The notes beneath the pieces were generated by a model. The model had not been told where the DNA came from. It ran no database searches and saw only the letters and a program-made list of their open reading frames with translations. Shown here in pieces: positions 225-46,252 of a stretch of 64,000 nucleotides of DNA. The position numbers were made by a program, and so were the translations under genes. Source of the DNA: Salpingoeca rosetta (lineage: Eukaryota > Protista > Choanoflagellata); assembly GCA_033442325.1 (NCBI GenBank), contig JAWQFM010000006.1, forward strand, positions 1,193,124 to 1,257,123, given 5' to 3'. How positions within the stretch are numbered: the stretch's first letter is position 1; each line of letters begins with the position of its first letter.

Positions 225-5795
<5,571 letters not shown>

Positions 5796-5813
5796 GGTTG
5801 GTCACTACGCCTC

Positions 5814-5857
<44 letters not shown>

Positions 5858-6660
5858 ACAGATTGCGAGATTGTCGCTTTGGTTGAGTGGTCAGTTGTGT
5901 TGCTGGTCATGTGGTGCTGTTGCTGTGCATGCCTTTGCTGGGCACAAGTGCGTGCACGCGTGTTACCGTGCTCGCCTGTGCTTGTGTAACGAGCCTAGAG
6001 CTCACAATCACTCCTATGTTGGCATTGACAGGTGTAGCTGTGTACACGACGGAGGTCTAGCAGGTGATGTGACATGACGTTACACGCATGTGTTGCTGCG
6101 TGCCGTCATCGCTGTTGTTGTTGATGTCGCTAGCGCTGCTGTGATTGCCGCTGTGCCTACCCTGCCCTTGTGCACTGCATGGCCTCTGTTTATACTTTGG
6201 GTGTCGCGGGTTCCTCCACTTCCGTGCGTTACTCTTGTGCGCGAATGTCTTTGCTCAGGGCTCCTTTTCTTATTTTGGAGGCGTGTGTGTGTGAATCACG
6301 CCGTCACAATCGCTTGTGTTACATTACCTGGTCTTCTTGGTGTTGCTTGCTTGCTCCGCATCTGTAGGCGCTCCTCTGTGCGGTATTGCTTCCCGTCTCT
6401 TTTGCTTGTTTTAGAAGCCCCTTTGCGTCGCTTCAATGTGCGTTCCTACATGGTCTGCACTTCACGTTGACACTTTCTCACTGATGTCGGTTGACTGCTC
6501 AATGGTTTGATTTGCTGAGGGGCCCCTCGGCTACTTGGGTTGCTGTTTTATCATTTCTCAACTACACGAGTGATCATGGTTGAACTGCAACCTCCATGGA
6601 TGTGTGTGGGGGGGAGGGGATGGTGATGCGGCGACAGGTTGGTGAGGTGCGCCGTGGATG

Positions 6661-8405
6661 TCAGAGGACAGCAGCATGTGCGTTGTGGCGGAATTGCGGG
6701 GTTGCAGCCTGTTCGGCACCGCTGTTGTCGTCCAGTTCCTCGCCACCATCTTGGTCATGACGCCGTTCTTGCGGCAGGGCGTCTGAGCCCGGTGCGGGTT
6801 GGTGGTGCTCTTCCTCGTCGCCGGAACTGGCCCGCACGGGCTCTGTTCCTTCCACCTGTTCCTCGACCTCTAGGACCTCGCCTGCTGCATCGCTGCGGCT
6901 GCTGCCTGAGGGCTGGTCGGCGCCATCACGGCTCATCCTGTTGCCGCTTCCACCGCTGTCGCCGTTGTCCGCGCTATTGCGCTCCTCGAGTTGCTGTGCG
7001 AGCATTGCCCAGCTGTGCTCCCTCTTGCACAGAGGGCATCTGCTCCGCGGAAGGTCCGTGTTTAGCCAGAGCTCCACGCAATGTGCGTGGAAGACGTGCT
7101 CGCAGGACAACACCTGTGGGTATGTATGTTGCGAGGGTATGGTGTGTGTGGGTGAGTGAGTGTGTGTGTGTGGGTGAGTGTGGGTGGGAGTGGGTTGCGT
7201 TGGGCGTGGGTGCATGTTGTGAGCTTCGTTTACAACGGGATGCGAAGACACATGATTTGTGGTGCAGTTGCGACATTGCTGGCTCTAACCCGGACTGTAT
7301 CGCCGATGAAGTACGTCATGAGGCAGATGGAGCACTGCCCTGTTGCATGCAAGCATCGCGCGTCGCAGACATCAGAGGTGAGAAGGGCGCCACGTGCTCA
7401 TACTGAACTGAACATGCCTTCTTCTTGCTTGCATGCATGCAAGCGAATACAGTATGACATGTTTGTGGCGGCATGAGTGTCAAAGGCTCGCGTGACGCTT
7501 TCACAAGCCCATTGCAGTGAAGCGCTCATCGCTTCCACTTCCCTCCCTCCATTGCTTCCTTCCTTCCTTTCTTTCTACTCAACCTCACCTTGATCCAGCA
7601 TGAAGATGTTTCTGGTCGTTGACATGCGGCGCCAGGCTTGCAGGGCGCCGCTGTTTTCAAAGTCGTAGTCGTGGTGCTCAATGGGCTGCAGTTCTTCGTC
7701 TCCACGGCGATTGCGGCGGCGGTGGCGGCGGTGGCGGCGGTGGCGGCGGTGTGCATACCACACTCGCCTGCAAAATGAGAACATGGCAGTCCGCAAGGAT
7801 CGATGCAAGTGCAAACTTGCAAAGGTGAGTACAAAAACTGCAGACTTTCGCACTGCTTTTGTGTCTGTGTCTGTGTCTGTGTCTGTGTCTGTGTCTGTGT
7901 GTGTGCATAACTTCGTGTGTCTTCGTGTATGTGAATCTCTCTTGTGTGTGTCTTGTGGGAGTCTTCGTGCGTGTGTGTATGTGTGTGTTCTGTGTGAACA
8001 ATGAGCGTGTTTTCAGGGTCACAGTGATGTTGTGAGGGATGGAAACGATCAGCAGAAGGGATAGTTGAAGAACAATGGGGGCTTGTGTTGCATGTAATGT
8101 GGCATGTGATGTGTGTGAGCATATGGAAGGAGACCCGTGCAACCCCTCTCATTGGAAAAGCAGAAGCCGCAGGTGAGAAGGAGATACACTCGTGCATGTC
8201 AACAAACCGCACGTTTTCAAGAGCCATCCCATGATAGTGCAGCTGCACAGCGTGAGCAAGCTCAGCAGTGCGAGCACGATGATGTACGTTGTCTGTGAGA
8301 ACATTGATGGTTCTTTGAGTTTGGAGTGGAACAGGCATGAGAGAAACTGAGAAGTGCAGCAACGGTCTGATGGCAACAAGCAGCAAGCACAAGATGCCCA
8401 CGCAC
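6661..8405 (-). CDS. RING-H2 finger protein (probable E3 ubiquitin ligase) with upstream hydrophobic segment
   Basis: Splicing exon ~7291-7340 (QCSICLMTYFIGDTVR) to exon ~6661-7112 (VLSCEHVFHAHCVELWLNTDLPRSRCPLC) gives a full C3H2C3 RING-H2. Upstream exons encode an Arg/His-rich stretch (~7589-7790) and GILCLLLVAIRPLLHF (~8400). 5' end is uncertain and may extend to ~8820. Confidence 0.8.
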
Positions 8406-16539: not shown

Positions 16540-17511
16540 CACACAACACACACACACACACACACAGTGCAATGTTGTTTCATCACGGCAACCACAATTG
16601 CTTCACGCATTGATTGTGTCTTGTGCGTTCTGTCGATGCGTAGCGCAAGTTGGTTGCGTCCGACTTCCAGCTCGTGGCTGTTCACGCGACCGTGTTCAAG
16701 ATTCGTTCCGCCCTCTACAGTACGTCTCTCTTGTGTGCGCGTGTGTGTGCATGGAGCAGAGGAGACAGGGGGAGATACTGCGCCATGCCTCCCCCACCCC
16801 CTTAGCTTGTATTGATTCCACGCCTTTTCATGATGCCATGAACAGATTGCAAAGGCCAAAAGGCGCCACAGCACAGCCTGCAGCCCTATCTTCGTGCTGT
16901 TGAGGACAAGGTAATAGTGACACTGCTTGTGCGTGTGTTCATGTATGCGCATGTGTGTGCATGTATGTGCATGCGTGTGCATGTATGTGCATGCGTGTGC
17001 ATGTATGTGCATGCGTGTACATGTATGTGCATGCGTGTGCATGTGCGTGCATGTTTGCACATGTATGTGTGTACGTATGTGTGTGCGTGTGTATTTGCGT
17101 GTTTGGTGGCCTCACTGCATGTGTTTTGATGCATGTATGCGTATGATTGCGCACGCGGTCTTGTCCAGGGATGCATGCGGTACCGGCTTGTGCTGCCGCC
17201 CGAGTACAACATCGATCCCCAGGCGCTGCTGGAGGAGGAGAACCGGCTTTCCCAGAACGACAGTCAGTTTGGGATTGCGCCCGGTATTGAGGTCGTGTCG
17301 TCTGCTGCGCAGGCATACGGCAACATGCCGCCCACCTCCCCGCAACCAGACACGAACGAGGGCTATGGCGTCATCACCAACGGCCAAGGTGCGCGCGCGT
17401 ATGTGTGTGTGTGTTTCTTTGTTTGTGGGTTGGGGTGGGATATGCTTTCTGCTTCTTGCTATGGCACTGCGTCCCATGTTATGAAATTGCCGCCAGTACG
17501 ACGACGACGAC

Positions 17512-17556
<45 letters not shown>

Positions 17557-17561
17557 TCATC

Positions 17562-17595
<34 letters not shown>

Positions 17596-18617
17596 TCATC
17601 AACAACAACAACAACAACAACAGCAACAACAACAACAGCAACAGCAACAAGCTGCACGCAACAAGCAACGAGACGTACTAACTGGAGTTGTTGTTGCGTG
17701 CTCGCCGATAGGCTATGCCCAGGCGCAGGACAGCGACGACGACTTTTCGGACGATGATGACGACTTTAGCGACACGGACGTGCCTGCACACGCGCCACCA
17801 GCACAACCTCAGTTCCAACAGCCGCCACCCCAGCAACAAGGTGCACCGGCCCCACCGCCGCCTCCTCCGCCGCCGTCTTCGCAACCCCAGCAGCATGGGG
17901 CACCAGCGCCAGCACCGCCGCCGCCGCCACCGCCCATGCCGAGCGGGCAGGATGCGTACTATGGAGACGTCGCGTCGCAGCCGCAGCCGCAGCAAGAGGA
18001 GATGTATGGTGATGTGCCGACATACCAGCAGCAACAACAGCCGCCATCACAACAAGGAGGTGCGTGCGCGTGGGTGATGCGCTGCTGGTGGTGGTTTGTG
18101 TGTCGACATGTCTTCTTCTTTTTCTTTTTCCTCTTCTTCTTCCGCCTTTGTGCCCTTTTGGTGTGCCATTCAACGCTTCACAATTCTCCTTTCTCACAGC
18201 GCACCCGCGTCTGCGCCTGCTTCCTTCTCGTTTCTGGCTGCTTGTGTTTCCGTGCTTGGCCACAAACACAGCTGGACAATGCCGCGTGCTGTATGACTAC
18301 GACGCCCAGGAAAGCGATGAGCTGTCCATTCGGTAAGATGTTCAGTGCGGCCTACAATACGATGCGGTGTGGTACACACACACACACGCACGCACGCACA
18401 CACACACACGTACGCACGCACGCACGCACGCACGCACACGCGCACACACACACACACACACCAACAAGCTCACGTTTTTCTCTCTTGTTTTGTCGTGGCA
18501 GCGCTGGTGATGTGATCACCCTGACAGACACGTCCGATGACGTGTGGTGGCAAGGTGTGTTGGCAACCACAAACCAAACTGGCATGTTTTCCGCGCGAAT
18601 ACGTGCAGATGATGTGA
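12388..18617 (+). CDS. F-BAR + HR1-like coiled coil + Pro-rich + SH3 protein (NOSTRIN/CIP4-like)
   Basis: FCH motif FFGAFW...[37 protein letters not shown]; central REGLMRLW helix; acidic and poly-Pro region ~17712-18059; SH3 [33 protein letters not shown]...TGMF. The canonical SH3 end FPREYVQ needs removal of one T at 18587-18590 (stop 18615-18617). Confidence 0.88.
15630..15685. repeat. (CAT)n microsatellite, intronic
   Basis: Direct reading. Confidence 0.95.
17511..17650. repeat. (CAA)n microsatellite, intronic in F-BAR gene
   Basis: Direct reading; lies between donor ~17389 and acceptor ~17711. Confidence 0.9.
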
Positions 18618-19777
18618 TGTGCAGGCAGTGTGGCATCCCGTGTCACATCACTCCTGTACGATTTGACTTTCTTTTTTCTTTCTTCACTCATTTTATGATC
18701 AGCTTTCTGTGTGTGTGTGCGTGTGTGTGTGTGTGTGTGTGTTGTTTGTGTACGTGTGTGTGTGTGTGTGTGTGTTGTTGTGTTGTTGTGCGTGTTCGTC
18801 CTTGATACATGAAGGTTCAGCCTACGATAGCGCGTTTAGTGACAGAGCTGGATATCCCGGAGGGGGATCCCCCACAATGGGCACGGTTATTGTACTAGCT
18901 TATATCCCACCAGGGTCTTCTGAATGCAGATGACGCAATTGTGGAGTTAAAGGGGTTCATTCTGAGCACACTGTTACGGCCGATGAGTCGTAAGTGTGTG
19001 TGTGTGTGTGTGTGTGTTTGTGTACGTGTGTGTGTGTGTGTGTGTGTGTTTGTGTGTTTGTGCGTGTTGCCTTGCATGACGACGACGGCTTGTGTGAAAA
19101 ACTCAAACGTTCCCATCCATCCATCTTCAAAAATAAAATGCCAGAAGGACGTGCGACGTTTTGTGGAAAGCTTTCACAAACAATCGCTTGTTTATGTTGT
19201 TGGTCATGTGCTTGCAAGCAAGCCCCGCAGCAGTAACAAGCAGGAAGCCAGCGAAGAGTAAGCGACATCGCCATTCCTTGCGTGTTGTCCCCCCCCCCTC
19301 CTCTCGTTCCCCGCCATTACCAACACGCTCTTCTCCACCACCACACACGAAGCAACGAGTGTCAAGACCAAAGGCGACTAACGCCACACCACTCCCAGCT
19401 CTCGTCTTCCCACGAGCGACCCCAATGTATGCCGTCGTGTTGCTGAGTGTGGGAGTTTGGATGTGTTTGCACTGCTTTGCTTGTCGAGTTTGGTGCGGTG
19501 CGCTGCGGCACTCTCTGCTCAATAGGCACGCCTGTGTGTTGTGTTGTTGTGTTGTTGGGTTTCTCACACACACCCATACACACACCCATACACACACCCA
19601 TACACACACACTCTCTCTCTCTCTCTCTCACCTCTCTCTCTCTCTATCTCTCTCAATCTCCTCATCTCTCTCTCAATCTCTCTCTCTCAAACTCTCTCTC
19701 TCTCACACACTCACACACACATTTACAATCCCTTGAGGGTATTCAGGCGTGGCCAGACAAGTGCCCGCATCAGCGTC

Positions 19778-20438
19778 ATGTTTGGCGTTCTGGTGGCAGG
19801 TGCCCTGCTGCTGCTGCTGTCAACAACGTCTGTGGCCGGCCAGAATGCGACCACGTCAACCCAAACAGGGTTTACCACCACCGCCGCCACCTCAACGACG
19901 ACGACGACGAGCACAACCACAACCACAACAACCACAACCACAACCACAACCACAACAACCACCACGACCACTACTACCACTCTTGCTCGTGCAGGTTTGT
20001 TGTTCGGATACGCGATACCTTGATACTATTTGCTGGACAATGCAAACACATGTCTTCACAAGTACGTACATCGGGCACACACCCGCGCTGACAGACACCC
20101 ACGCTCATATGCGCTTACGAACACACACTGTCCTCCGTTGCAGTGAGCCCCAAGGTGCAAACTGTAGATGGCAACTTGGAGTTGATTGTCCCGTCCGGTA
20201 TCGTTGTCTTCCGCGAGGGCGAAGCCGAAACCACTCTCTCTTCGTAAGTACGCTCACCACACCCCAACTCGCTCGCTCAGTACACCAATACCAATGTACT
20301 CAAGTTCCACTGTTGTCTTGTATTGCTGGATTTGTGCTGACCTGCGTTCCATCGCGCGTCTGGTCACCTGCTTGCATTGTGCACTCTGGTTCGCATCAGC
20401 CCTCTCCGAAAGTTGTCTTACGCCCTCCCTGCCCCAAA

Positions 20439-20493
<55 letters not shown>

Positions 20494-20910
20494 CACACAC
20501 ACGCACACACACGTGCTTGCCTAGTCTTCGCAACGACATTGATGTTCGTGTGGATGCAGTGGATGTCAAGCACACCATGAGCACACAAGTCTTGCGGTCT
20601 GATCTCGACACTGAGGCGGTATGCACCTACCTATGCACGATGAGCGCGCGGCTTGGGATGACTTGGTTCTTGTTGTTGCTGCTAGTCTGGGTCCCATCAC
20701 TAGTTTGTGAAGGATTACTGACCATGCCCGTGGCATCGGGTTTCTGCCCACTCGCACGCACGCACGCGCACGCATGCAGGCAACGCGGGAAAGATCAATT
20801 GGCTCCCTTGAGGCAGCCATTGAATCGACGTCCCAGTTTGTCAATGGCAACCTGGCTGGCAAAGCCCAAAGCCTGTGCGTTCCCCCACATGCTGCTGCTT
20901 CCCGTGTGTG

Positions 20911-20984
<74 letters not shown>

Positions 20985-22982
20985 CGCTCTATACCTCTGC
21001 TAGAATCCCTTTACCTAGGCTCGTATCGGTTGCTTCCTGCCGTTGTGCAATGATGTTTACCATCGTGTCGCACGCTCATATCCAGCCGTCCTCTCTCTTC
21101 TCTCCTCTCCTCTGTCTCACTCTTCCTCCACCTCTCCCACTCACTGACACACTCTCGCACTGCCAACCAAAGGGAGACTGCTCTCACGTCCACAGCAAGC
21201 GACATCACAATGCAGCTGACAGACATCACATCGAGTACAACTAGCCTGCACGAGCGCGTACGTTTTCCAGCAAGAGTGTTGTGTCCTTCGTGTCACGAAT
21301 GTTATGCTTTTGTGTGCATGTGGGGATGCAGTGCATGCTCTGCTACTTTGTGTCTGTTGCCAAATGTTCAATCAACTTCGATGTATCCATGTGTCGCCTT
21401 CTCACACTCACTTCGGTCGTCTCAATCCACCGACATACACACACACACACACACGCATACGCGCACACATACGCACACACATACGCGCACACACCGCGCA
21501 CTGGTGACTTGGGTTTAACGGTGCGCAACAGACCAATGCCGTGTCAAGTGCAATGGCCACAGCACAAACGTCATTGGAGAATGCGGTGGTGTCTGCCATC
21601 GAAACGGCACACAACGGAGACGAAAGCGTTGCCGAGCAGGTATTACTTATGAATCGGGGAAGGGAGCCTGCCTCGTGAGCCCACCACTAGCCACAACAAC
21701 ACATACGCCTGCACACACCACACACTCACACACACCACACACACACACACACTCTCTCTCACACCACTCACTCACACACGCACACACGCACACACTCACT
21801 CACACACGCACACACGCACACACGCACACACGCACACACGCACACACGCACACACACTCACATTCGCACACTCACACACACACACGCACACACTGACAAA
21901 CTCCTGTGCATGAATGATATGGTGACCCCGTGCTCCGCTTGTGTGATTAGGCTGCCATGTCCATCGCGCACGTCCTGGGCAACCAAGCCTCCTTACAGCA
22001 GGCATTCATTGCTGCAGATGGCTCCTTGGAAGCCAAGGTAGCACATGTCCAGTAGTTATGCACCTGTCGCTGTGTCACAATTACATGCATACAACATGCA
22101 TTGGCCTCCTGCTGTAACCTCCACCCCGCATCTACATGGCTGACAGACATTCTCTCACCATACACACTCACCAACACACACGCGTGCACACGCACACACC
22201 CTTTTCTCACTATGTTTGGGCTATGACAGCTTGAAGCTGCCGAGAGCGGCCTAACCGAAGCCATCTCCGAGGCGATGTCCTCATTGAAAGGCGCAGATAC
22301 GCAACTCGGGCAACGCATTGATGGCGTGCATTCCGCCACTGTCTCCTTGCACACACGTACAAATGGCTTGCAGGGAGCCATTGGACAGCAATCGCAAGAG
22401 CTGCAGGTTCGTGTGCCGACGCTTCATTGTGCACTCTACACGCGTAGACTGACACACCCGCACGCTTTCTTGCTCGGTGTGTGTGTGTGTGTGCGTATCG
22501 TTCGCATCGGCTCATCCATATGCTGCCGTCCTTTGCTGGTGCTTGGTTTCCTTTCCTCGCGTGCCGGTCTACCACAGGCTTTGATCACGACGACCGCCAA
22601 TGATGTTAGGAACGATCTGAATGCTGCCATCCAAAACTCGGCCAGCACCCTCAATAGTGTCATCAACTCGAAGACGGCGCAAGTGTCGGGCGATGTGAAT
22701 GCACTGAATGCAAAGCTGACACAAACAGAAGCCGCGCTGGCTGCCGCCCGCGATCTTGCCTGCGGCTCGCTTGCCTACGCCACAAACGACAATCCAAACG
22801 GCAGGTGCCAGCCTGAAGCCCCAATCGACATGCGGTATCACGGCATGAGAGACACCCGAGATGGGCCCACATCCTGGGCCAATATCATTGACAGGTGAGC
22901 CAACAGCATTAGTATGAGAGCATGTACTCCCACCACGCCTGTTTTTTTTTTTTCCAGCTATGTAGCTTGTGTTCTCCTTGTT

Positions 22983-23058
<76 letters not shown>

Positions 23059-24541
23059 GCGCGCACACACAACACGTCCTCGCCTCATCACCAAGCTGTT
23101 TGACATCCTTCTTCACCCACGCTTTCCTGCATGCTTGCGTGTGTGTGTGTGTGTATTCCAGGGCCCTCACCTTTGATAAGCAAGGGTCTCAGGGCGAAAC
23201 TGTCCTCAAAATCTCGTACACAGACACGCATGGCTTTTATGCAACCTCATCCTCGTCCACGGCTGGCGCCTACCGCTTGTTGGTATGTTGTCTGCGTCGT
23301 CAACCTCCACCTCCTTGAGGCATTTTTCTTCACGCGCGTGCACATGTTATTGAATTTGTAAGCGTTGGCTCACATGTGTTGTTGTCCACCATTTCATGTA
23401 CTTGTGACGTTCAAAGGTCAACGGCGAATGTCATCAGAACCGATGCTACAAGTACTTGCACAGGTGAGCGTGCAGAAATGGATGAAACAAGGGGGGTGGC
23501 CGTTGTGCTCTTCTTCCCTTCCTTGAGTGAGCGTCTGAGATCCATGCCCACATTGCGCATTGCATTTGTTTCTATTGCGTACTTCATCTGGAGATGACTC
23601 GTGAATTCCTCACGAATTATTTGTGACTGCTCATGTGTACATGATGACAGCGACGGTTACGTTGGTTGGAACATCTTTTCAAACACGTGGACGTGGTGGC
23701 TCCACGACATCAGCGCTGGCAGACATAACCTCGTCATGCAGGTGCCAAAAAAAAAAAACACACATCCGGCCGAGCAGCCATTCGAAGCGCAATGCGGCAA
23801 TTTGCTCCATCCCACCCACATGTCATGCATGATGCATGCTCCAATTCAACAACAGCTACAGGCACGCACACACACACACACAACGTACCGGATCTCGCAC
23901 ACACACACACACACACTCTCTCTCTCTCTCACACACACTCTTTTCCCACACACTCACTCACTCATACCCGCGCCTGATAGCACTACCGTGATGCTGCGCG
24001 GTCGTCTTACTTCCTTGCGGGGTGGTCAAACAACGCACAAGAGAACCACTTGGTCGTTGAGGAAATCCCTGTTCGTGATGTCACGGTGTCCAAGAATTTT
24101 CCTGGTGCGTTCAGCACTTGTTGGGCATTTGACTTGTTCCTTGACTCTCGTACCTGGGTTTCTTGTCATGTGCACAACACGTTCGTGGATTGCGTTTTGT
24201 AGCAATGTATTGTTTTGTTTTGAACCCTTCAGCCCTTCGCCTCCTTTCTGAGCTCACCCATGAACGGTTCGCTTGATCTCTGGGCTGGCTCTGCTTCTCC
24301 CTGTCATGCACAGATGTGCGCACACGAACAACTTCCTGGACAGACGTGCCGGAACGCGTTGTCACACACTTCAAGCACGACGATTCCACGGATCTGCAAA
24401 TCATTTTCGTGCGTGCGTGCGTGTGTGTGTGCACATGTGTGTTGGTGTGTGCGTGCGTGTGTGTGTGTGTGTGCACATGTGTGTTGGTGTGTGCGTGCGT
24501 GTGTTATGGTGTTGTGTGCGTGCGTGTGTGTGCCTGCGTGC

Positions 24542-24607
<66 letters not shown>

Positions 24608-26031
24608 GTGTGTGTGTGTGTGTGTGCGTGTGGGGGGGGGCCTAGCCAGCGGCCTTAACCACTCTGTTTTTTCACCTTGTACTGTGATGTTGCTATCATT
24701 TGTAGTCGGAGACGATTGGTTTGAACCAGTACCAGCACACGACAGCGTGCGGATTCCAAGCAATCATGTACGGGCCTGCATACCCAGGCGGTATTAACAT
24801 TGGCTACCACTACTCCCACAGCCATGGCGGGCGCAACTGGCGCATCTGGCCAGCCGATGTCCAATACTACGCCCAGCGCTCCACGCTCAACCTCCCTCGC
24901 GGCAAATACACCGTCAAGCTTCAGTGGAGGCGAGAGGCCGGTGCATATGAGGTGCGTGTAATGAACACGGCTTTGAGTGAGACCGCATCACGTTTTCGTC
25001 AACCCATCACCTCTGACATTGCTCTGTCCCTGAACCCGCTGTCACGCCAAGCATTGCCATCCTCACTTATCGTGCCACACGCGTGGTTCGCCTCTGCTTC
25101 TTCGGGTGCATTGCAACACAGTGTCTTGCTGGCTGGCCTGGCTCCGAGGCCAACAGTATCGCCATCATTGAGAAACACCCGCAACGGTTGGCCATCGCAC
25201 CTCCAAACCTCTACTCCGGCTCAACCCGCGTGCGCCTCCCCGACATCCGCAACCGCGGCAGCGCCAGATGGGAGAATGTTGCAAACAGGTGCGCACTGGT
25301 TGCGTATTTCCGTCCTCGTCACCCACCATGCATGGAGCGATGAGGGCAAATACAACCATGTGTATGTGCCGTTCATTTCTCACACGCGTTGGGGTTTGCA
25401 CTTCTTGCAGGGCTGTGTCCTTCAACAAGAAATTCTCGACCAGCATCATCCGCGTCACATACACAGACACGCTTGGGTTCTACGCTGTCGGCCACGCTGA
25501 TAGTGCGTCATGCCCCCTCCCCCGCCCTATGTCTATCTTTGCCTGTCGACATGCAAGCGTGTGTGCGTGAGTGTATGTGTACACATCTACCTCAAACCTC
25601 ATGACATCGGTGCTTTTGGATTTCACAGCGTGCCGTTGGCGATTGTTGGTGAACGGAGGATCAACGGCGGGCACCCGCGAGATGTTCAACCACGCAAGTA
25701 CGGCTGGTGGATGGTAAGTCATCCGAAATGCATCTCCTGTTTTCCGTCTTCCCATTGCTCATTGCGCCTGCAACACGCACGCTGCTGACCTCACTCGCTG
25801 AGCATATGTTTGACTTCGAACACTGGGTTTGCAGGCGTATCAACAGTCACACTTACATCTGGTACCCTTCTGTGTCCACCGGAGTGTCTACGTACACGAT
25901 CCAGACCTACCGCAACCCAAGCGGCGCTTCAGAATGCCTGAACGTGAGTGAGCAAAGCAATCGTATCACTTTTTTCAAAAACGAGTTTTCTCTGTGTGTG
26001 TGTGTTTGTGTGTTGCTTCGTGGTTGCCAAA

Positions 26032-26107
<76 letters not shown>

Positions 26108-26195
26108 CTCTCTCTCTCTCTCATTCATGCAGGGATGGTCAACCTCGAACCATTTCCTCCTGGTGGAAGAGATCGTTCAAGGAACAACAGCCTAA
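19778..26195 (+). CDS. Secreted protein: signal peptide, Thr-rich tract, short beta motif, long coiled coil, three tandem beta-rich (CTHRC1-C-like) domains
   Basis: About 20 phase-consistent GT-AG exons from ATG 19778 (MFGVLVAGALLLLLSTTSVAG) to TAA 26193-26195. Three internally homologous C-terminal repeats. No C-terminal TM or GPI signal seen. Confidence 0.8.
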
Positions 26196-26389: not shown

Positions 26390-27122
26390 AAGCAAGAACA
26401 CAAGGAGAATGAGCAAACTCAACACGGGCAACACGATCAAATCACAAGACAAGTGCACACACAGTCAACAACGCTGCCAAGGCAACATGGGCAGAGTGTG
26501 CACGAACACAAACAATCTAAACAGCGAACAGCATGCATACATGCGCGCAGAGCAATGCTAAGCATGGCATGAATGCTTGCAGGCAAGCATACACAACAGA
26601 CAACACTTTACAACACTGCATGGCACGCACACATGGCATTTGCCAAGCATGGCGAGCATGCACACACACACCTGGCACACAACTCACGTGTGTAGGGGAA
26701 GGAGGAGAGGAGAGGCAGTTGGCACACATGCATGCCAGCAGAGAGGAAGGAATGTTTGCCAACGGAAAACCCACAAAGCAGGTGTTGTTGGCAAACAATG
26801 TAGAAACACGACAGGTGGTGTGTGTGTTTACTGTAGGCAAACGCAACAAACAAGAACACAAGGAGAATGAACAAACACAGCAAGCTGCTGCCAAATCAAC
26901 TCGGGCAGCACGCTCAAACAAACACTAGACAAGTGCACACACAGTCAATGACGCTGCCAAGGCGACATGGGCAGAGTGTGCACGAACACAAACAATCTAA
27001 ACAATGAGCAGCATGCATACATGCGCACAGAGCAATGCTAAGCATGGCATGAATGCTTGCAGGCAAGCATACACAACAGACAACACTTCACAACACTGGC
27101 ATGGCACGCAGGCATGGCATTT
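26390..27122. repeat. ~480-bp period tandem repeat (about 1.5 copies visible, runs into gap)
   Basis: 26451 aagtgcacacacagtca...gcagagtgtgcacgaacacaaacaatctaa...atggcatt recurs at 26931 with scattered substitutions. Confidence 0.9.
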
Positions 27123-27826
27123 NNNNNNNNNNNNNNNNNNNNNNNNNNNNNNNNNNNNNNNNNNNNNNNNNNNNNNNNNNNNNNNNNNNNNNNNNNNNNN
27201 NNNNNNNNNNNNNNNNNNNNNNNNNNNNNNNNNNNNNNNNNNNNNNNNNNNNNNNNNNNNNNNNNNNNNNNNNNNNNNNNNNNNNNNNNNNNNNNNNNNN
27301 NNNNNNNNNNNNNNNNNNNNNNNNNNNNNNNNNNNNNNNNNNNNNNNNNNNNNNNNNNNNNNNNNNNNNNNNNNNNNNNNNNNNNNNNNNNNNNNNNNNN
27401 NNNNNNNNNNNNNNNNNNNNNNNNNNNNNNNNNNNNNNNNNNNNNNNNNNNNNNNNNNNNNNNNNNNNNNNNNNNNNNNNNNNNNNNNNNNNNNNNNNNN
27501 NNNNNNNNNNNNNNNNNNNNNNNNNNNNNNNNNNNNNNNNNNNNNNNNNNNNNNNNNNNNNNNNNNNNNNNNNNNNNNNNNNNNNNNNNNNNNNNNNNNN
27601 NNNNNNNNNNNNNNNNNNNNNNNNNNNNNNNNNNNNNNNNNNNNNNNNNNNNNNNNNNNNNNNNNNNNNNNNNNNNNNNNNNNNNNNNNNNNNNNNNNNN
27701 NNNNNNNNNNNNNNNNNNNNNNNNNNNNNNNNNNNNNNNNNNNNNNNNNNNNNNNNNNNNNNNNNNNNNNNNNNNNNNNNNNNNNNNNNNNNNNNNNNNN
27801 NNNNNNNNNNNNNNNNNNNNNNNNNN
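27123..27826. other. Assembly gap (N run)
   Basis: N bases; hides the copia RNase H and 3' end. Confidence 1.
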
Positions 27827-30800
27827 TGTGCCGAAGCTGGCGTCGCTGTAGCACACAGGTCCAGCGGTTGGTCCTTGCGCGTGCCGCTGCGTCGCTTGAA
27901 GAGGAGGCCCGTGCTCGCTCGTCGCCTTCAGGTACCGCACGACGTGCTTGGCTGCCTGCCAGTGGACCGTCGTGTAACGGTCCATGTAACGGCAGAGCAG
28001 CCCGCACGCGAAGCTGACGTCTGGTCTCGTGCGGTTGGCCAGGTACAGGAGCGAGCCGACGAGGTTGCGGAAAGGCAAGCGTCGGTCGGGCTGCTCGCTG
28101 GTGCTGGAGGCGTCGATGCCAACACGCATGGGCGTGGACACGCTGGCTGCCGCTGCCAGGTTGTAGTCGTTGATGATGTCGTTGATGGCCTGTGTCTGCG
28201 CAATGTGCAACACCCCGTCAGCTGGTGACGTCAGGTGAAGGCCCAGGTACCAGGTGAGCGGGCCCAGGTCCTCTGCCTCGAAGCTCTCCTTGATCTGCTG
28301 CTTGCAGGCATGGATGTGGCGGCCGCTGCTGCCGCTGATGATGAGGTCGTCGACGTACGTGATGATCCATGTGCGCTGTCCGTCGTCGTGGAGCTTGGTG
28401 AAGAGGCAAGCGTCGACATTGCTTTGCGCCCATCCGTTGGTCTTGAGGAAGGTGTGCAGCTTCTTGGCCCATGCACGGCCAGCTTGCTTGAGGCCGTAGA
28501 GCGGCTTGAGCAGCCGGCACACCTTGCCCGCGTAGCGTTGAGCGCCGTCGCCGATGTCGGTGAAGTGCGGCGGCAGCTCCATGTACAGCTCCTCCTTGAG
28601 ATCAGCCTGCAGGTAAGCCGACTTGAAGTCGAGCTGGTGCAGCTGGTGCTGTCGTTGCAGGGAGACGGCGAGTACAGTGAGGATGGTCTTGGCTGCTGGT
28701 GTTGGAGCGTAGGTCTGGTCGAAGTCGATGCCCGGTCGCTGGCTGAAGCCCTTGGCGACCCAGCGTGCCTTGAAGCGCGTCGGCGTGCCTTCCGCATCAC
28801 GCTTTACCTTGAAGACGAAGCGCGACTTGAGCAGCGTGTGCTGCCGTGGCACGGCGCTGCGTGGGATGAGCTTGATGACGCCGTTGCGCTCCATCGCCCC
28901 GATCTCCTCCAAGCACGCCTGAGTCCACTGCTTGCGTTGCTGGCTCTTGAGTGCCTGCTTGATGCTTGCAGGCTCCGTGAGGCTGGTGTCGCCACTGCTG
29001 CTTGCTGTGAACGCGCCTGCCTCGGTGTCGCTTGCATCTGTTGTGTCTGGATCGTAGTTGGCGTCGTTGGTGTCGCTGCTGCTGTCGGCGTCAAAGTCCG
29101 TGAGCAGGAAGTCTGTCTCGACATCCTCGTCCTGCTCCTCGTCGATGTGAACCGTTGGTGGCTCACCGTCAGTGGTGCTGTTGCTGCTGTCACGTGCACT
29201 GGGAAGCTGGAGCATGGACGATGTCGTGGATGTCTGCACTTGCTCCTCCCCCTCATCCACGACATCATCGGCCTTGGAGAAGGGAAGGAAGCGGACGTGG
29301 ATGGAGGACACAACGGTGTTTGTGTCTGCGAAGTAGACGAGGTGGCTGTTGCTGCTGCTGTTGTAGCCGACGTAGATGCCTCGACGACCCTTGGGCTGCA
29401 GGCGTCCGCGCTGTGTGCTGATGTGGACGACGGCCGGCTGCCCGAAGACGCGCAGCTGCGGCACGTGCTTGGGCAGCGAGCCCGTGACAATCTGCAGCGG
29501 TGTCTTGCCGTGGAGGGAAGGGCGAGGCATGTTGTTGAGGATGTGCAGGGCGTGGTTGCAGGCGAGGCTCCAGCACGATGCGTCAAGGCCTGCACCCGTG
29601 ATCATGGCTCGCACCATGTCGGAGAGGGTGCGCACCTGTCGCTCGACGATGCCGTTCTGCGCCTGGGTGTACGGCGGGGCTGCTGGTGCTGCTTCAGGTG
29701 CTTCTTGACGATGGCNNNNNNNNNNNNNNNNNNNNNNNNNNNNNNNNNNNNNNNNNNNNNNNNNNNNNNNNNNNNNNNNNNNNNNNNNNNNNNNNNNNNN
29801 NNNNNNNNNNNNNNNCTGTTGTTGTGGGCGAGATGGGGAGCTTGGTCTCGCGCAGGAAAGACTGGAACGCGGCAACTGCGTCCTTCTTGGCATTGAGATG
29901 GACTGCATGTAAGAGCTTGCTGCCCTCATCGACGATGACGAGGCTGTAGCGCTTGCCCGTGGGTGAGTCCGCGGTCCAGTCGACGATGTCGGCGTGGATG
30001 CGCTCGCCGGGCACCTGTGTGCGCTCCGCGTGCTTGCTGACGCTGTGACGAGTGCTCTTGGTGACTGCACACGTTGTACACTGCTTGCTGCTGATGGCGT
30101 TGCGATCGTCGATGCCCATCAGCTTGCAGTACTGCTGCACGTCGTTGTCGTTGCGGTGGCCAAGCACCTCATGCATCGATGGTGTGTGCGCCTTGCTCTG
30201 GGCTGCAGGAGCTGCTGCAGGTTGCTGTGGTTGCTTGCAGGCATCGGTGGTGAGTCCGTGTGCCGTGGATGGACCAACAGCAACAATGGGCCAGCACCGG
30301 AGGCTGTTGCGCTCCTTCAGCTTGACCTCGGCTCCGTGGCTGAAGCGCACGTAGTGCCCATCAGCGCCATCACGTTGCGAGTGGCCCGTTGGCCTGCCGC
30401 TGCTGTCCCGGGTCAGACGACCGAGGGCGATGAGGTTGGCCTGGCCCTCGGGCACGTAGAGGCACTCCTGTAGCACAATCTGCATCGCAGCTCCGCTCGT
30501 CGTGCGTGCATGCAACAGCACAGAGCCAACACCGCGCACGGGCACACGTGTGCCGCCAAACGCAGTGATGTGGCGTGGATGGTGCTGTTGCAGGTGCGGT
30601 GTCAGCTCCACGAAGGCGTCCTTGACGAAGGTGAGGTGGTGTGAAGCACCCGTGTCTGCAAGCCACGTGAGTGGGTCATGCAGCTGCGTGGGTGTAGTAG
30701 CTGTGGCAGCGACGAAGGTTGCTGCGTCTTGACCATGTTGATGCTGTGCCTGTGCAGTGAAGCCTGTTGCTCCGTTGTCGCGTTGCTTCTTGCGACACTC

Positions 30801-31230
30801 TGCTGCACGGTGTCCATACTTGCCACAGTAGTGACAGTTGCCACGGAAGCGGCGCCCCTTGCTGTTGCTGTTGCCGTTACCGCCGCCGTTGTTGCGTCCC
30901 TGGCGTCCGTGGTTGTTGCTGTTGTTGGAGAAGCCGCGTCTTCCACCTCTGCGTGGCGGTGCGCTTGCCATGAAGCCGCCTGCCTGCGGCTGTGTGCGTG
31001 AACCACGCATCTGCTGCTCCAGCTGCTGCAGCCTGATGCTGAGCTCGAGGAGGGAGGGGAAGCGGCCACTGGCAAAGTAGGGAAGCGTGAGCGGGGCTGT
31101 CCAGCGTGGCAGCTGCTTCCAGACGATGGTGAAGAGGTCCTCGTTGTCCTGGCGCACGCCTGCGTCCTGCAACTGCTGTTGCAGCTCCATGTGTCGCTCG
31201 AAGAAGCGGGCGAGGTTGCCTGCCGCAGGG
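27827..31230 (-). mobile_element. Ty1/copia LTR retrotransposon internal region (gag-PR-IN-RT-RH), 5'-truncated, 100-N gap at 29716-29815
   Basis: Zn knuckle CHYCGKYGHRAAEC; protease WLADTGASHH; integrase HEVLGH..CTTC, HADI, PPYTQAQNGIVER; RT RFKARWVAKGFSQRPGIDF, LDFKSAYLQ, LYGLKQAGR.W, YVDD; RNase H start YSDASF. Order PR-IN-RT-RH defines copia. Confidence 0.97.
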
Positions 31231-44904: not shown

Positions 44905-45064
44905 GTCCAATGAGAGAGACAGAGACAGAGAGACAGAGACAGAGAGAGAGAGACAGAGAGAGAGAGACAGAGAGAGACAGAGAGAGACAGACAGAGACAG
45001 AGACAGAGAGAGACAGAGAGAGACAGAGAGAGACAGAGAGAGAGAGAGACAGAGAGAGAGAGAC

Positions 45065-45119
<55 letters not shown>

Positions 45120-45204
45120 CAGAGAGAGAGAGACAGAGAGAGAGAGACAGAGAGAGACAGAGAGAGACAGACAGAGACAGAGACAGAGAGAGACAGAGAG
45201 AGAC

Positions 45205-45275
<71 letters not shown>

Positions 45276-45288
45276 GACAGAGAGAGAC

Positions 45289-45387
<99 letters not shown>

Positions 45388-45398
45388 GACAGAGAGAG
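44905..45398. repeat. Compound (GA)/(GAGACA) microsatellite with 180-bp higher-order duplication
   Basis: 44941-45000 is identical to 45121-45180; runs into the gap. Confidence 0.9.
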
Positions 45399-46252
45399 NN
45401 NNNNNNNNNNNNNNNNNNNNNNNNNNNNNNNNNNNNNNNNNNNNNNNNNNNNNNNNNNNNNNNNNNNNNNNNNNNNNNNNNNNNNNNNNNNNNNNNNNNN
45501 NNNNNNNNNNNNNNNNNNNNNNNNNNNNNNNNNNNNNNNNNNNNNNNNNNNNNNNNNNNNNNNNNNNNNNNNNNNNNNNNNNNNNNNNNNNNNNNNNNNN
45601 NNNNNNNNNNNNNNNNNNNNNNNNNNNNNNNNNNNNNNNNNNNNNNNNNNNNNNNNNNNNNNNNNNNNNNNNNNNNNNNNNNNNNNNNNNNNNNNNNNNN
45701 NNNNNNNNNNNNNNNNNNNNNNNNNNNNNNNNNNNNNNNNNNNNNNNNNNNNNNNNNNNNNNNNNNNNNNNNNNNNNNNNNNNNNNNNNNNNNNNNNNNN
45801 NNNNNNNNNNNNNNNNNNNNNNNNNNNNNNNNNNNNNNNNNNNNNNNNNNNNNNNNNNNNNNNNNNNNNNNNNNNNNNNNNNNNNNNNNNNNNNNNNNNN
45901 NNNNNNNNNNNNNNNNNNNNNNNNNNNNNNNNNNNNNNNNNNNNNNNNNNNNNNNNNNNNNNNNNNNNNNNNNNNNNNNNNNNNNNNNNNNNNNNNNNNN
46001 NNNNNNNNNNNNNNNNNNNNNNNNNNNNNNNNNNNNNNNNNNNNNNNNNNNNNNNNNNNNNNNNNNNNNNNNNNNNNNNNNNNNNNNNNNNNNNNNNNNN
46101 NNNNNNNNNNNNNNNNNNNNNNNNNNNNNNNNNNNNNNNNNNNNNNNNNNNNNNNNNNNNNNNNNNNNNNNNNNNNNNNNNNNNNNNNNNNNNNNNNNNN
46201 NNNNNNNNNNNNNNNNNNNNNNNNNNNNNNNNNNNNNNNNNNNNNNNNNNNN
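45399..46252. other. Assembly gap (N run)
   Basis: N bases; hides the transposon 5' end and possibly DHX35 exon 1. Confidence 1.

What the first reader, a model, noticed from the sequence alone, without database searches (positions are those of the whole stretch)
19778..26195. Candidate secreted homotrimeric fibre/adhesin: cubilin-N-like cap, coiled-coil stalk and three CTHRC1-like heads
Seen: splicing ~20 exons yields a signal peptide, a ~40-residue Thr tract (mucin-like), a short beta motif, ~300 aa of helical stalk, a Cys pair (ACGS...GRCQP) and three tandem ~150-aa domains, with no membrane anchor. Known: the cubilin N-terminus and the collagen-containing CTHRC1 are both trimer-forming animal extracellular modules. 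Inference: a trimeric extracellular fibre with nine head domains, combining modules that sit on separate proteins in animals. It could act in ECM/theca/colony adhesion or bacterial prey capture. The ORF track shows only fragments of this architecture.
Basis: partly seen in the sequence, partly recalled or inferred. Interest (0 to 1): 0.82.

Follow-up and report, generated by a model that had tools for sequence, protein, structure and literature searches.

The report
Secreted coiled-coil protein with three jelly-roll heads
A real, transcribed 20-exon gene encodes a secreted protein with a sugar-carrying threonine tract, a roughly 40-nm helical stalk predicted to self-associate, and three tandem TNF/C1q-type heads that probably belong to the family of the animal protein CTHRC1; it looks like a pre-animal version of stalk-and-head matrix or recognition proteins, but its function is untested.

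Summary
Splicing 20 GT..AG exons (19778-26195, + strand) gives an 839-aa protein. One 2,524-nt spliced RNA contig carries every junction from exon 1 to exon 19, so the locus is a single gene.

- signal peptide, then a tract with 36 Thr in 51 residues
- a conserved 35-aa beta 'cap'
- a 271-aa proline-free helical stalk, hydrophobic period 3.60, with 11- and 18-residue repeats
- a conserved Cys pair
- three mutually homologous heads (z 15-28)
- no membrane anchor

- **Stalk:** three copies of its last 80 residues model as a parallel, in-register bundle (ipSAE 0.71, best control 0.01). Other oligomer numbers were not tried.
- **Heads:** a partial model is all-beta. Its best match is a bacterial TNF-like lectin (Z 6.4), with many TNF/C1q trimers below it. 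Heads 1 and 3 carry the published Cthrc1 sequence blocks in order.
- **Pfam CTHRC1_C:** no exon piece reaches it, and the spliced domain could not be submitted.
- **Cubilin likeness of the cap:** not supported by sequence.

There is a paralogue in the same genome, a relative in environmental metagenomes, and a third gene that shares the cap and stalk. I file it as a new architecture for a known domain kind. The scan had already noted similar genes elsewhere in this genome.

The parts
19778..19994 (+). Exon 1 (aa 1-73): signal peptide (about aa 1-21) and Thr tract (aa 22-72, 36 Thr)
   Evidence: model; hydrophobicity, composition. The exon 1/2 join follows from the loose letters of the X6 contig.
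20144..20243 (+). Exon 2 (aa 73-106): conserved beta 'cap' motif (DGNL..VP.G...F.EGE)
   Evidence: The motif is conserved in the C19 paralogue and in a C13 gene. Present in the X6 contig.
20525..20618 (+). Exon 3 (aa 106-137): end of cap, start of helical stalk
   Evidence: from the record coordinates
20780..20874 (+). Exon 4 (aa 138-169): stalk
   Evidence: joints 20617/20779 and 20874/21173
21173..21257 (+). Exon 5 (aa 169-197): stalk
   Evidence: joints
21532..21639 (+). Exon 6 (aa 198-233): stalk
   Evidence: joints
21951..22037 (+). Exon 7 (aa 234-262): stalk
   Evidence: joints
22230..22406 (+). Exon 8 (aa 263-321): stalk
   Evidence: joints
22578..22894 (+). Exon 9 (aa 322-427): last 60 aa of stalk, Cys pair C383/C398, first 27 aa of head 1
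   Evidence: Three-copy model of aa 322-401. Environmental relative P0001 at 39% identity.
23162..23282 (+). Exon 10 (aa 427-467): head 1, Cthrc1 block 1 (F.K...t.l.i)
23417..23463 (+). Exon 11 (aa 468-483): head 1, loop with C472/C477
23651..23741 (+). Exon 12 (aa 483-513): head 1
23981..24104 (+). Exon 13 (aa 514-555): head 1 C-terminal block (GW...VVEEI) and linker
24314..24408 (+). Exon 14 (aa 555-586): head 2, first strands
   Evidence: The orthologous piece is modelled.
24706..24951 (+). Exon 15 (aa 587-668): core of head 2 (five predicted beta strands, C601)
25122..25288 (+). Exon 16 (aa 669-724): end of head 2 (C669, GWPGS...IIEK), about 25-aa linker, start of head 3
25411..25502 (+). 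Exon 17 (aa 724-755): head 3, Cthrc1 block 1 (FNK..STSIIRV)
25629..25713 (+). Exon 18 (aa 755-783): head 3, block 2 (CRWRLLVNG)
25835..25943 (+). Exon 19 (aa 783-819): head 3 (C817)
   Evidence: joint 25712/25834
26133..26195 (+). Exon 20 (aa 820-839 and TAA): head 3 C-terminal block (GW...LLVEEI)
   Evidence: It is supported by homology with exon 13 and by the contig's length.

Best explanation
The locus is one expressed gene for an 839-aa secreted glycoprotein (mature chain about 89 kDa before glycans). It works as a stalk-and-head extracellular binding or matrix protein.

**Shown**
- The exon structure and a single transcript.
- A cleavable-looking signal peptide and no membrane anchor.
- A Thr tract, a conserved beta cap, and a 271-aa proline-free amphipathic helix region.
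- A conserved Cys pair.
- Three homologous beta-rich heads.

**Supported by models**
- The end of the stalk forms a parallel, in-register three-chain bundle, with C383 and C398 at the chain interface. This suggests inter-chain disulfides that lock the base of the heads.
- The heads have a TNF/C1q-type jelly-roll fold.

**Inferred**
- The Thr tract is O-glycosylated, like a mucin.
- The whole stalk is a near-straight rod of about 40 nm, built on 11- and 18-residue repeats.
- The heads are divergent members of the Cthrc1 C-terminal family. Here a coiled coil does the job that a short collagen helix does in animal CTHRC1.
- The multivalent heads bind a repeated ligand, most likely glycans on matrix, theca or bacteria. 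Collectins, C1q, EMILINs and bacterial TNF-like lectins work this way.
For: **Gene and transcript:**

**Secretion, no anchor:**

**Stalk**
- No Pro. Global hydrophobic period 3.60 with power 114.6, against a shuffle maximum of 43 +/- 10 (0 of 500 shuffles reach it). Autocorrelation peaks at lags 11, 18, 36 and 54.
- Three copies of residues 322-401: ipSAE 0.71 (runs 0.68-0.73), best of 3 controls 0.01, partner pLDDT at least 82, runs agree in at least 98% of contacts. Contacts are in register (14-14, 18-18, 47-47) and include positions 62 and 77, which are C383 and C398. That mark was reached by 21 of 30 proteins solved as pairs of one chain and by 0 of 23 solved as single chains. The calibration used two copies, so the counts hold only roughly here.

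**Heads**
- Pairwise z 14.8-27.6.
- AF2 model of the orthologue's exon 14 plus exon 15 is all-beta, with pLDDT 67-93 in the real parts.
- VIA-align top hit is the TNF-like lectin PLTL, 9ib6_A: Z 6.4, rmsd 3.0, 93 aligned. Pgp3 C-terminal domain, TRAIL, TL1A, RANKL, FasL, CD40L, APRIL/BAFF, C1q and BclA are all in the top 50.
- The Foldseek list is dominated by TNF ligands.
- Language-model neighbours of exon 15 include Bc2l-C_N (0.91) and CTHRC1_C (0.90).
- Heads 1 and 3 hold the three Cthrc1 consensus blocks in order; 0 of 20,000 shuffles do.
- Leclere et al. 2020 report Cthrc1-C-like domains without collagen repeats in choanoflagellates, and up to three in tandem in Symbiodinium.

**Conservation**
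- Paralogue with the same exon order on G000:C19.
- Environmental relative, 39% identical over exon 9 and 60% over exon 15.
- The Cys pair is kept in both.
Against: - No exon piece, and no 163-aa read-through holding 113 aa of head 2, reaches Pfam CTHRC1_C even at E <= 10. The six-frame scan of the genome with PF25815 is blank.
- All fold matches are below Z 8. The tool itself calls that range middling.
- Exon 15 alone gives only generic beta-sandwich hits.
- The shape search of the ESM Atlas did not surface CTHRC1_C clusters.
- The three-copy model cannot tell a trimer from a dimer or tetramer, covers only 80 residues, and structure models readily bundle helices.
- The stalk holds 14 Gly and could be broken into shorter helices.
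- Leclere et al. found no Cthrc1-C domain in the S. rosetta genome. If this genome is that species, the heads are at least too divergent for their BLAST search.
- No ligand, localisation or phenotype is known.
Confidence: 0.6

Rival explanations
1. Same gene and fold, different head geometry. The three diverged heads of one chain close on themselves into a single-chain pseudo-trimer, as the A, B and C chains do in the C1q head or as in engineered single-chain TNF. The particle then carries one knob per chain (three knobs if the stalk is trimeric) rather than three stacked rings of nine domains. The stalk's oligomer number is then not dictated by the heads.
For: - There are exactly three heads in this gene and in the paralogue, in conserved order.
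- Symbiodinium proteins have 'up to three' such domains.
- The heads have diverged from each other, with head 2 the most distinct, as expected for non-equivalent positions in a pseudo-trimer.
- The linkers are about 12 and 25 aa. From general knowledge of single-chain TNF constructs, that is enough to join the C-terminus of one TNF-type protomer to the N-terminus of the next.
Against: - The end of the stalk models as a three-chain bundle right up to the heads. That would place three head-1 domains around one axis, which favours inter-chain rings.
- No model of the whole head region could be made.
Confidence: 0.3
2. The heads are a jelly-roll, lectin-type domain unrelated by descent to animal CTHRC1. 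They could be relatives of bacterial TNF-like lectins (BC2L-C N-terminal domain, PLTL) or of phage fibre tips, possibly acquired from bacteria. On this reading the likeness to CTHRC1 is only a few short motifs.
For: - The best structural hit is a bacterial TNF-like lectin.
- The best named language-model neighbour is Bc2l-C_N, and the top unnamed cluster is bacterial or phage.
- Pfam CTHRC1_C is not reached.
- In Leclere's tree, choanoflagellate sequences group with bacterial and dinoflagellate ones.
Against: - Pfam Bc2l-C_N is not reached either.
- The Cthrc1 blocks F.K...t.l.V, C.RW.f..NG and GW...iiEE occur in the right order in heads 1 and 3.
- The gene has 20 spliceosomal introns and a paralogue, so any transfer would be old.
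- The two readings are not exclusive if CTHRC1_C itself belongs to the same superfamily.
Confidence: 0.25
3. The 'stalk' is not an extended coiled coil. It is a folded helical bundle or an apolipoprotein-like amphipathic region, so the protein is a compact monomer or dimer rather than a fibre.
For: - There are 14 Gly in the stalk, several in clusters at 283-314.
- Many core positions are small (Ala, Ser, Thr).
- Exon 9 has weak Pfam similarity to Apolipoprotein and SF-assemblin (E 0.07-0.09).
- The 3.6-residue period is that of any amphipathic helix.
Against: - The hydrophobic stripe stays largely in phase over 271 residues. Global power is 114.6, against 20-70 in 42-aa windows, and exceeds every shuffle.
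- There are 11- and 18-residue repeats and no Pro.
- The three-copy model is in register along 68 residues.
Confidence: 0.12

Closest known systems
[quoted passage not shown]
   Same: - Secreted.
- An oligomerising stalk followed by a C-terminal beta domain of 130-150 aa.
- Heads 1 and 3 carry the blocks F.K...t.l.V, C.RW.f..NG and GW...iiEE that Leclere et al. print for human and Nematostella Cthrc1.
- The domain is modelled as C1q-like.
- Choanoflagellates are reported to have the domain without collagen repeats.
   Different: - There is no G-X-Y collagen repeat, only one run of three triplets inside the stalk.
- A 271-aa coiled-coil-like stalk takes its place.
- There are three tandem heads instead of one.
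- The Pfam threshold is not reached by any piece that could be tested.
- The Thr tract and the cap have no counterpart in CTHRC1.
Symbiodinium and choanoflagellate 'Cthrc1 C-terminal domain only' proteins (Leclere et al. 2020, PMC7058181)
   Same: - No collagen repeat.
- Up to three tandem domains (A, B, C) in Symbiodinium.
- Two, three or six sequences per choanoflagellate transcriptome, compatible with genes holding three domains each.
   Different: The paper gives no architecture for these proteins, and their sequences were not at hand. It lists 0 for the S. rosetta and M. brevicollis genomes.
EMILIN / multimerin, collectins, C1q and CTRP proteins (my own knowledge, not tested here)
   Same: The design principle: a secreted chain, a trimerising coiled coil or collagen stalk, Cys residues near the junction, and C-terminal trimeric heads that bind ligands multivalently.
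   Different: - No EMI, collagen, C-type lectin or Pfam C1q domain was found.
- Those proteins have one head per chain.
Bacterial TNF-like lectins (BC2L-C N-terminal domain PF21592; PLTL of Photorhabdus, PDB 9ib6)
   Same: - Best structural match of the partial head model: Z 6.4, rmsd 3.0, 93 of 134 residues.
- Second-ranked language-model neighbour.
- These lectins are trimeric jelly rolls.
   Different: - 15% identity.
- No Pfam hit.
- The bacterial proteins have no long stalk of this kind.
- Sugar binding is untested here.
Cubilin N-terminal trimerisation region
   Same: A short beta-rich segment directly before a coiled coil in a secreted protein.
   Different: A profile of three cap sequences finds no cubilin chain in the PDB sequences at E <= 10. 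The only weak single-sequence hit is the T4 gp5 beta-helix (E 0.26), which is not significant.

Membership tests
Pfam PF25815 CTHRC1_C | Profile HMM score at or above the curated 27 bits | tested here: inconclusive
   - Single exons of the window, the paralogue and the orthologue give no match at E <= 1 or 10. Nor do two in-frame read-throughs, one of them holding 113 aa of head 2.
- The six-frame scan of the genome is blank, but the control genomes were blank too.
- The complete spliced domain has no reference and could not be submitted.
Pfam PF25815 CTHRC1_C | Conserved sequence blocks in order (F.K...t.l.V; C.RW.f..NG; tGW.s...ieE) | tested here: met
   The blocks are printed in Leclere suppl. 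Fig. S11. Heads 1 and 3 hold all three in order, against 0 of 20,000 shuffles. Head 2 holds looser versions. The patterns were written after seeing both sets, so this is supportive and not decisive.
Cthrc1 gene family sensu Leclere et al. 2020 | Collagen triple-helix (G-X-Y) repeat N-terminal to the C-terminal domain | tested here: not met
   The only G-X-Y run has three triplets (aa 308-316), without Pro, inside the helical stalk. The protein is therefore not a Cthrc1 in the strict sense.
C1q/TNF-type jelly-roll superfamily | Beta-sandwich of jelly-roll topology, 8-10 strands | tested here: inconclusive
   - The partial model covers about 75% of head 2 of the orthologue, has 7 strands and pLDDT 67-93.
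- TNF-like lectin Z 6.4; TRAIL, TL1A, RANKL, FasL, CD40L, APRIL/BAFF, Pgp3, C1q and BclA at Z 4.0-5.1.
- No Foldseek match at E <= 0.001.
- Z below 8 is middling by the tool's own note.
C1q/TNF-type jelly-roll superfamily | Heads assemble as trimers | not testable with these tools
Only the stalk end was modelled in three copies.
Trimeric coiled-coil stalk proteins | Long proline-free region with a coiled-coil periodicity and self-association in register | tested here: met
   Period 3.60 with 11- and 18-residue repeats, 0 of 500 shuffles reach it. Three-copy model ipSAE 0.71 against best control 0.01, parallel and in register. The number of chains was not discriminated.
Cubilin N-terminal region | Sequence similarity to the cubilin N-terminus | tested here: not met
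   phmmer and a 3-sequence profile against all PDB chain sequences found no cubilin at E <= 10. I did not verify that the cubilin N-terminal chain is in that copy of the PDB.
Pfam PF21592 Bc2l-C_N (TNF-like lectin) | Profile HMM match | tested here: not met
   No Pfam match for any piece. The only likeness is by fold and by language-model features.

The most novel reading that the evidence does not exclude
This gene is one member of a modular family of secreted 'cap + coiled-coil stalk + exchangeable head' proteins in this protist. The family would be a collectin-like recognition or matrix toolkit built from parts that sit on separate proteins in animals.

Heads or extra modules would include triple Cthrc1-C-like domains and TSP1 repeats. 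By the scan's unchecked notes they would also include ILEI, PA14 and beta-propellers.

The triple head would be a natural single-chain TNF/C1q-type pseudo-trimer that predates animal CTHRC1.
Probability: 0.25. Interest if true: 0.75.

Novelty: new variant of a known kind. Interest (0 to 1): 0.5.

Why it matters
CTHRC1 is a much-studied animal signalling and matrix protein whose C-terminal domain has no solved structure, and its receptor is still debated. The domain was already traced to choanoflagellate transcriptomes, but without an architecture. It was reported absent from the two sequenced model genomes (PMC7058181).

If this 55.4-Mb genome is the model species Salpingoeca rosetta, it holds two such genes after all. 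Both genes would sit in an organism where knock-outs and tagging are routine.

The architecture also suggests how the animal protein may have arisen: an older coiled-coil stalk replaced by a short collagen helix in front of the same type of head. The shared cap and stalk in at least three genes hint at a wider family of stalk-and-head proteins that predates animals.

Tried and rejected
**The main limit.** The spliced protein has no reference, and long letters may not be typed. Whole-domain Pfam, HHpred-like searches, and structure prediction of a complete head or of the whole protein were therefore left out.

**Join syntax.** I tried a join of two references once; it is not supported.

**Exhaustive protein search with exon 9.** It found only one relative (P0001, an exon-sized ORF from ENA metagenomes) and a spurious repeat protein (P0002). 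No full-length annotated protein is in that library.

**Word-index searches.**
- Exon 15: no candidates.
- A 9-row head alignment: only two allelic ORFs of the same environmental organism.

**JGI metagenome contig scan with exon 15.** 124 pattern matches, none confirmed.

**PDB sequence searches.** Exons 13 and 15 and a head profile gave nothing.

**Cap profile against the PDB.** The hits are designed propellers that repeat a DG.LY.I.PDG hairpin. This is an artefact of summed repeats, so I rejected them.

**Fragment tiling.** Tiling all head fragments without a template row collapses on an internal pseudo-repeat. Tiling works only with a long first row.

**ESM Atlas feature search.** Exon 13 and the paralogue's merged exon 18-19 gave no usable hit.

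**Fold searches.**
- Exon 15 alone: only generic sandwiches such as fn3 and FlgD.
- Viral fold library: nothing at E <= 0.001.

**Literature.** A search for a solved CTHRC1 structure or for S. rosetta secretome data on this protein found nothing useful.

**Tandem duplication.** Rejected: the model finds no second copy within the window.

Full report
**Observation.**

Reading the three forward frames between 19.6 and 26.4 kb, I joined 20 exons. All have GT..AG borders, and together they give one open frame from the ATG at 19778 to the TAA at 26193-26195. The product is 839 aa.

A run search found six 'RNA?' runs that hold about one third of the locus's words, close to the exon share. Laying two of them, plus two raw RNA-seq runs, on 19900-25899 gave the following:
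- One 2,524-nt contig (X6) and one 2,099-nt contig (X4), from different studies, are spliced exactly as modelled.
- Thirteen junctions are listed as GT..AG joints.
- E2/E3, E9/E10, E12/E13 and E14/E15 follow from the contig coordinates. Their flanking microsatellites made the tool drop the rows.
- The 48 loose letters in front of exon 2 have a printed consensus that matches the end of exon 1.
- Only E19/E20 was outside the stretch. It is supported by the contig's remaining length and by exon 13, where the homologous sequence is uninterrupted.
- Nearly all the raw stranded depth has its first mate on the minus strand, so the RNA is plus-strand. Coverage there is low (8 and 23 reads).

**Anatomy.**

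| Residues | Feature |
|---|---|
| 1-21 | The only strongly hydrophobic window in the protein; ends in ..SVAG |
| 22-72 | 36 Thr |
| 73-110 | 'Cap' (..VDGNLELIVPSGIVVFREGEAETT..) |
| 111-381 | No Pro, 2 aromatic residues, rich in Ala, Ser, Thr, Leu, Gln |
| 383, 398 | Cys pair |
| 401-554, 555-704, 705-839 | Three heads that align with each other |

- Local alignment scores between the heads are 14.8-27.6 SD above shuffles, and none of 300 shuffles reaches them.
- There is one N-X-S/T sequon (N23), no second hydrophobic segment and no hydrophobic C-terminus.
- Heads 2 and 3 have Cys at equivalent positions (C601/C669 and C756/C817), which suggests one disulfide within each domain. Head 1 instead has C472/C477 in a loop.

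**Stalk.**

The hydrophobicity of residues 111-381 has one dominant period of 3.60 residues. Its power is 114.6, against a shuffle maximum of 43 +/- 10, and 0 of 500 shuffles reach it. Autocorrelation peaks fall at lags 11, 18, 36 and 54.

This is the signature of hendecad and 18-residue repeats, meaning a nearly untwisted coiled coil rather than a classical heptad one. The stripe stays largely in phase across the Gly-containing sites. At 0.148 nm per residue the rod would be about 40 nm long.

Three copies of residues 322-401 were folded with controls:
- ipSAE 0.71 (runs 0.68-0.73), best of three controls 0.01.
- Partner pLDDT at least 82, and at least 98% of contacts shared between runs.
- Contacts are parallel and in register (14-14, 18-18, 25-25, 47-47), with 3-4-4 then 3-4 spacing.
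- C383 and C398 (positions 62 and 77) lie in the interface.
- The tool's mark was reached by 21 of 30 proteins solved as pairs of one chain and by 0 of 23 solved as single chains. Its calibration used two copies, so the counts hold only roughly here.

This supports self-association and is compatible with a trimer. Only the three-copy state was run.

**Heads.**

No exon piece matches any Pfam family.

The language-model search with exon 15 (82 aa) listed three leads: a bacterial/phage cluster without a family, Bc2l-C_N (a TNF-like lectin, 0.91), and a CTHRC1_C cluster (PF25815, 0.90). PF25815 scanned over the genome exon by exon gives nothing, but the controls were blank too.

The spliced protein cannot be referenced, so I looked for relatives with fewer introns:
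- The exhaustive search with exon 9 found P0001. It lies on 1-2.4-kb ENA metagenome contigs that carry an orthologue-like gene with the same exons.
- On contig L004, exon 14, its intron and exon 15 are in one frame without a stop. This gave a legitimate reference of 163 aa, of which 113 are real.
- With head fragments from the window, the paralogue and this relative tiled on it, AlphaFold2 gave an all-beta model. pLDDT is 67-93 in the real parts and below 50 in the 45-aa intron-derived loop.

Fold searches with that model:
- **VIA-align, 48,161 PDB representatives.** First is the TNF-like lectin PLTL (9ib6_A: Z 6.4, rmsd 3.0, 93 aligned). Further hits at Z 4.0-5.1 are Pgp3 C-terminal domain, TRAIL, TL1A, RANKL, FasL, CD40L, APRIL/BAFF, C1q and BclA.
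- **Foldseek.** Nothing at E <= 0.001, but the list is dominated by TNF ligands.
- **ESM Atlas shape search and viral library.** Only weak, mixed rows.

The window's own exon 15 folds into five strands (pLDDT 71), but alone it matches only generic sandwiches. Pfam is also blank on the read-through and on eight more pieces.

**Literature link.**

Leclere et al. 2020 (PMC7058181) report the following:
- The Cthrc1 C-terminal domain is modelled as a C1q-like jelly roll that can trimerise.
- It occurs without collagen repeats in several choanoflagellate transcriptomes, at 2, 3, 3, 3 and 6 sequences per species.
- Symbiodinium proteins carry up to three in tandem, and some bacteria have it.
- It was not found in the genomes of M. 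brevicollis and S. rosetta.

Their supplementary HHpred figure prints two consensus blocks, 'f.k...t.l.V...C.r.w.f.fng' and 'tGW.s...ieE'. Heads 1 and 3 carry these blocks in order: FDK..ETVLKI / YRLLVNG / GWSNN..LVVEE, and FNK.STSIIRV / CRWRLLVNG / GWSTS..LLVEE. No shuffle out of 20,000 does. Head 2 has looser versions.

I wrote the patterns after seeing both sides, so this supports homology but does not prove it. I put about 0.6 on true membership of the CTHRC1_C family, and more on the broader TNF/C1q-type fold.

The protein is not a Cthrc1 in the strict sense, because it has no collagen repeat. The only G-X-Y run is three triplets inside the stalk.

**Cap.**

The 33-aa motif recurs in two other genes of this genome:
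- the paralogue, at 50% identity;
- a gene on contig C13, where it follows a TSP1 repeat and precedes coiled-coil exons.

Against PDB sequences the single motif gives only the T4 gp5 beta-helix at E 0.26. The three-sequence profile gives designed propellers through a repeated hairpin, which is an artefact. No cubilin chain appears at E <= 10, so the cubilin comparison is unsupported by sequence. A short beta structure at the start of the coiled coil remains plausible but untested.

**Relatives.**

The paralogue on G000:C19 (about 265.3-270.5 kb) has the same order of modules: Thr tract, cap, helical exons, Cys pair and three heads. Its intron positions are mostly the same, and exons 18 and 19 are merged. 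Heads match head-for-head, so the triplication predates the duplication.

Outside this genome, the 1.84-billion-cluster library and the 5.8-billion word index hold only exon-sized ORFs of one environmental organism. The JGI metagenome scan found none. There is no second copy inside the window.

The scan's own notes list similar 'cap + coiled coil + other head' genes in this genome. I verified the C19 and C13 loci only, and I cannot be sure which notes they correspond to.

**Mechanism, and what remains inferred.**

My best reading (0.6) is a secreted, O-glycosylated, self-associating rod, probably a disulfide-locked trimer, with TNF/C1q-type heads at its C-terminal end that bind a repeated ligand multivalently.

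The main rival concerns geometry only. The three heads of one chain may form a single-chain pseudo-trimer instead of three inter-chain rings. The conserved number three and the 12- and 25-aa linkers fit that reading.

The two other rivals are:
- the heads are lectin-type jelly rolls unrelated by descent to CTHRC1;
- the helical region is a folded bundle rather than a rod.

Function (matrix, theca or colony adhesion, or prey capture) is conjecture.

**Verdict.**

The gene and its architecture are real and well supported. The family assignment of the heads is probable, the trimer is plausible, and the cubilin link is unsupported. It is a new architecture for a known kind of domain, of moderate interest. 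The interest would be higher if the genome is the tractable model S. rosetta, for which the domain was reported absent.

Noticed in passing
G000:C19:265300-270500 (locus L012, about 1500-7000): Paralogue with the same architecture: Thr tract, cap, helical exons, Cys pair and three heads. Intron positions are mostly the same, and exons 18 and 19 are merged. Its 3' end runs into a stretch of N.
   Followed up: partly
G000:C13:1505800-1507400 (locus L014, 940-3000): A third gene in which a TSP1 repeat (WSEWSPCSVSCG..) is followed by the same cap motif (ENGDLYLTVPDGNAVYFKEGD) and by coiled-coil-like exons. This hints at a modular family that shares the cap and stalk.
   Followed up: partly
L004-L006 (ENA metagenome contigs, 1.1-2.4 kb): An environmental relative of the gene, 39% identical over exon 9 and 60% over exon 15, with introns full of CA/GT repeats. 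Exons 11 and 12 are merged there, and the intron between exons 14 and 15 is in frame and free of stops.
   Followed up: partly
window 21274-21561: Run X4 holds a 288-nt unspliced contig that crosses the intron 5 / exon 6 border, at depth 35. The spliced contig over exons 3-6 has depth 11 and the 2,099-nt spliced contig from exon 6 onward has depth 106. It could be retained intron, pre-mRNA or DNA carry-over.
   Followed up: no
window 22699-22725 (aa 308-316, exon 8): Three consecutive G-X-Y triplets (GLQGAIGQQ) inside the helical stalk, in a cluster of Gly. The environmental relative has NGLIGTN at the matching place. It is too short and Pro-free to be collagen. It could be a conserved kink, or chance.
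   Followed up: partly
heads, aa 401-839: The first hairpin of each head (..SW.dv..R....K....l.i.y) resembles its central hairpin (GW.i.......G....l.iQ) closely enough that MAFFT stacks the fragments on each other. This suggests an internal duplication within the domain.
   Followed up: no
window introns of the gene (e.g. 20440-20510, 20910-20985, 22985-23070, 24400-24635, 26035-26125): Nearly every intron carries a long (CA)n/(GT)n or (CT)n microsatellite. These break short-read assemblies, and they made the reads tool drop several junction rows.
   Followed up: no
window about 27090-27900: A run of N (assembly gap or withheld stretch) about 0.9 kb downstream of the gene's stop codon.
   Followed up: no
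window 29697-31190 (-) and 44910-47543 (+): Mobile-element ORFs: a 498-aa ORF with a Pol polyprotein beta-barrel domain (E 4e-14) and an 878-aa ORF with a DDE_3 transposase domain (E 4e-14).
   Followed up: no
window 17405-18802 (+): A 466-aa open frame just upstream with a near-threshold SH3_1 match (22.7 bits, cut-off 22.9). It is probably part of the neighbouring gene. It was not modelled.
   Followed up: no
G000:C12:1011809, C12:1743841, C35:117892: Three identical short matches to the second half of the cap profile (..AVFREGEGVTSLA..) with the same score. They are most likely copies of a repeat element, not genes of the family.
   Followed up: no
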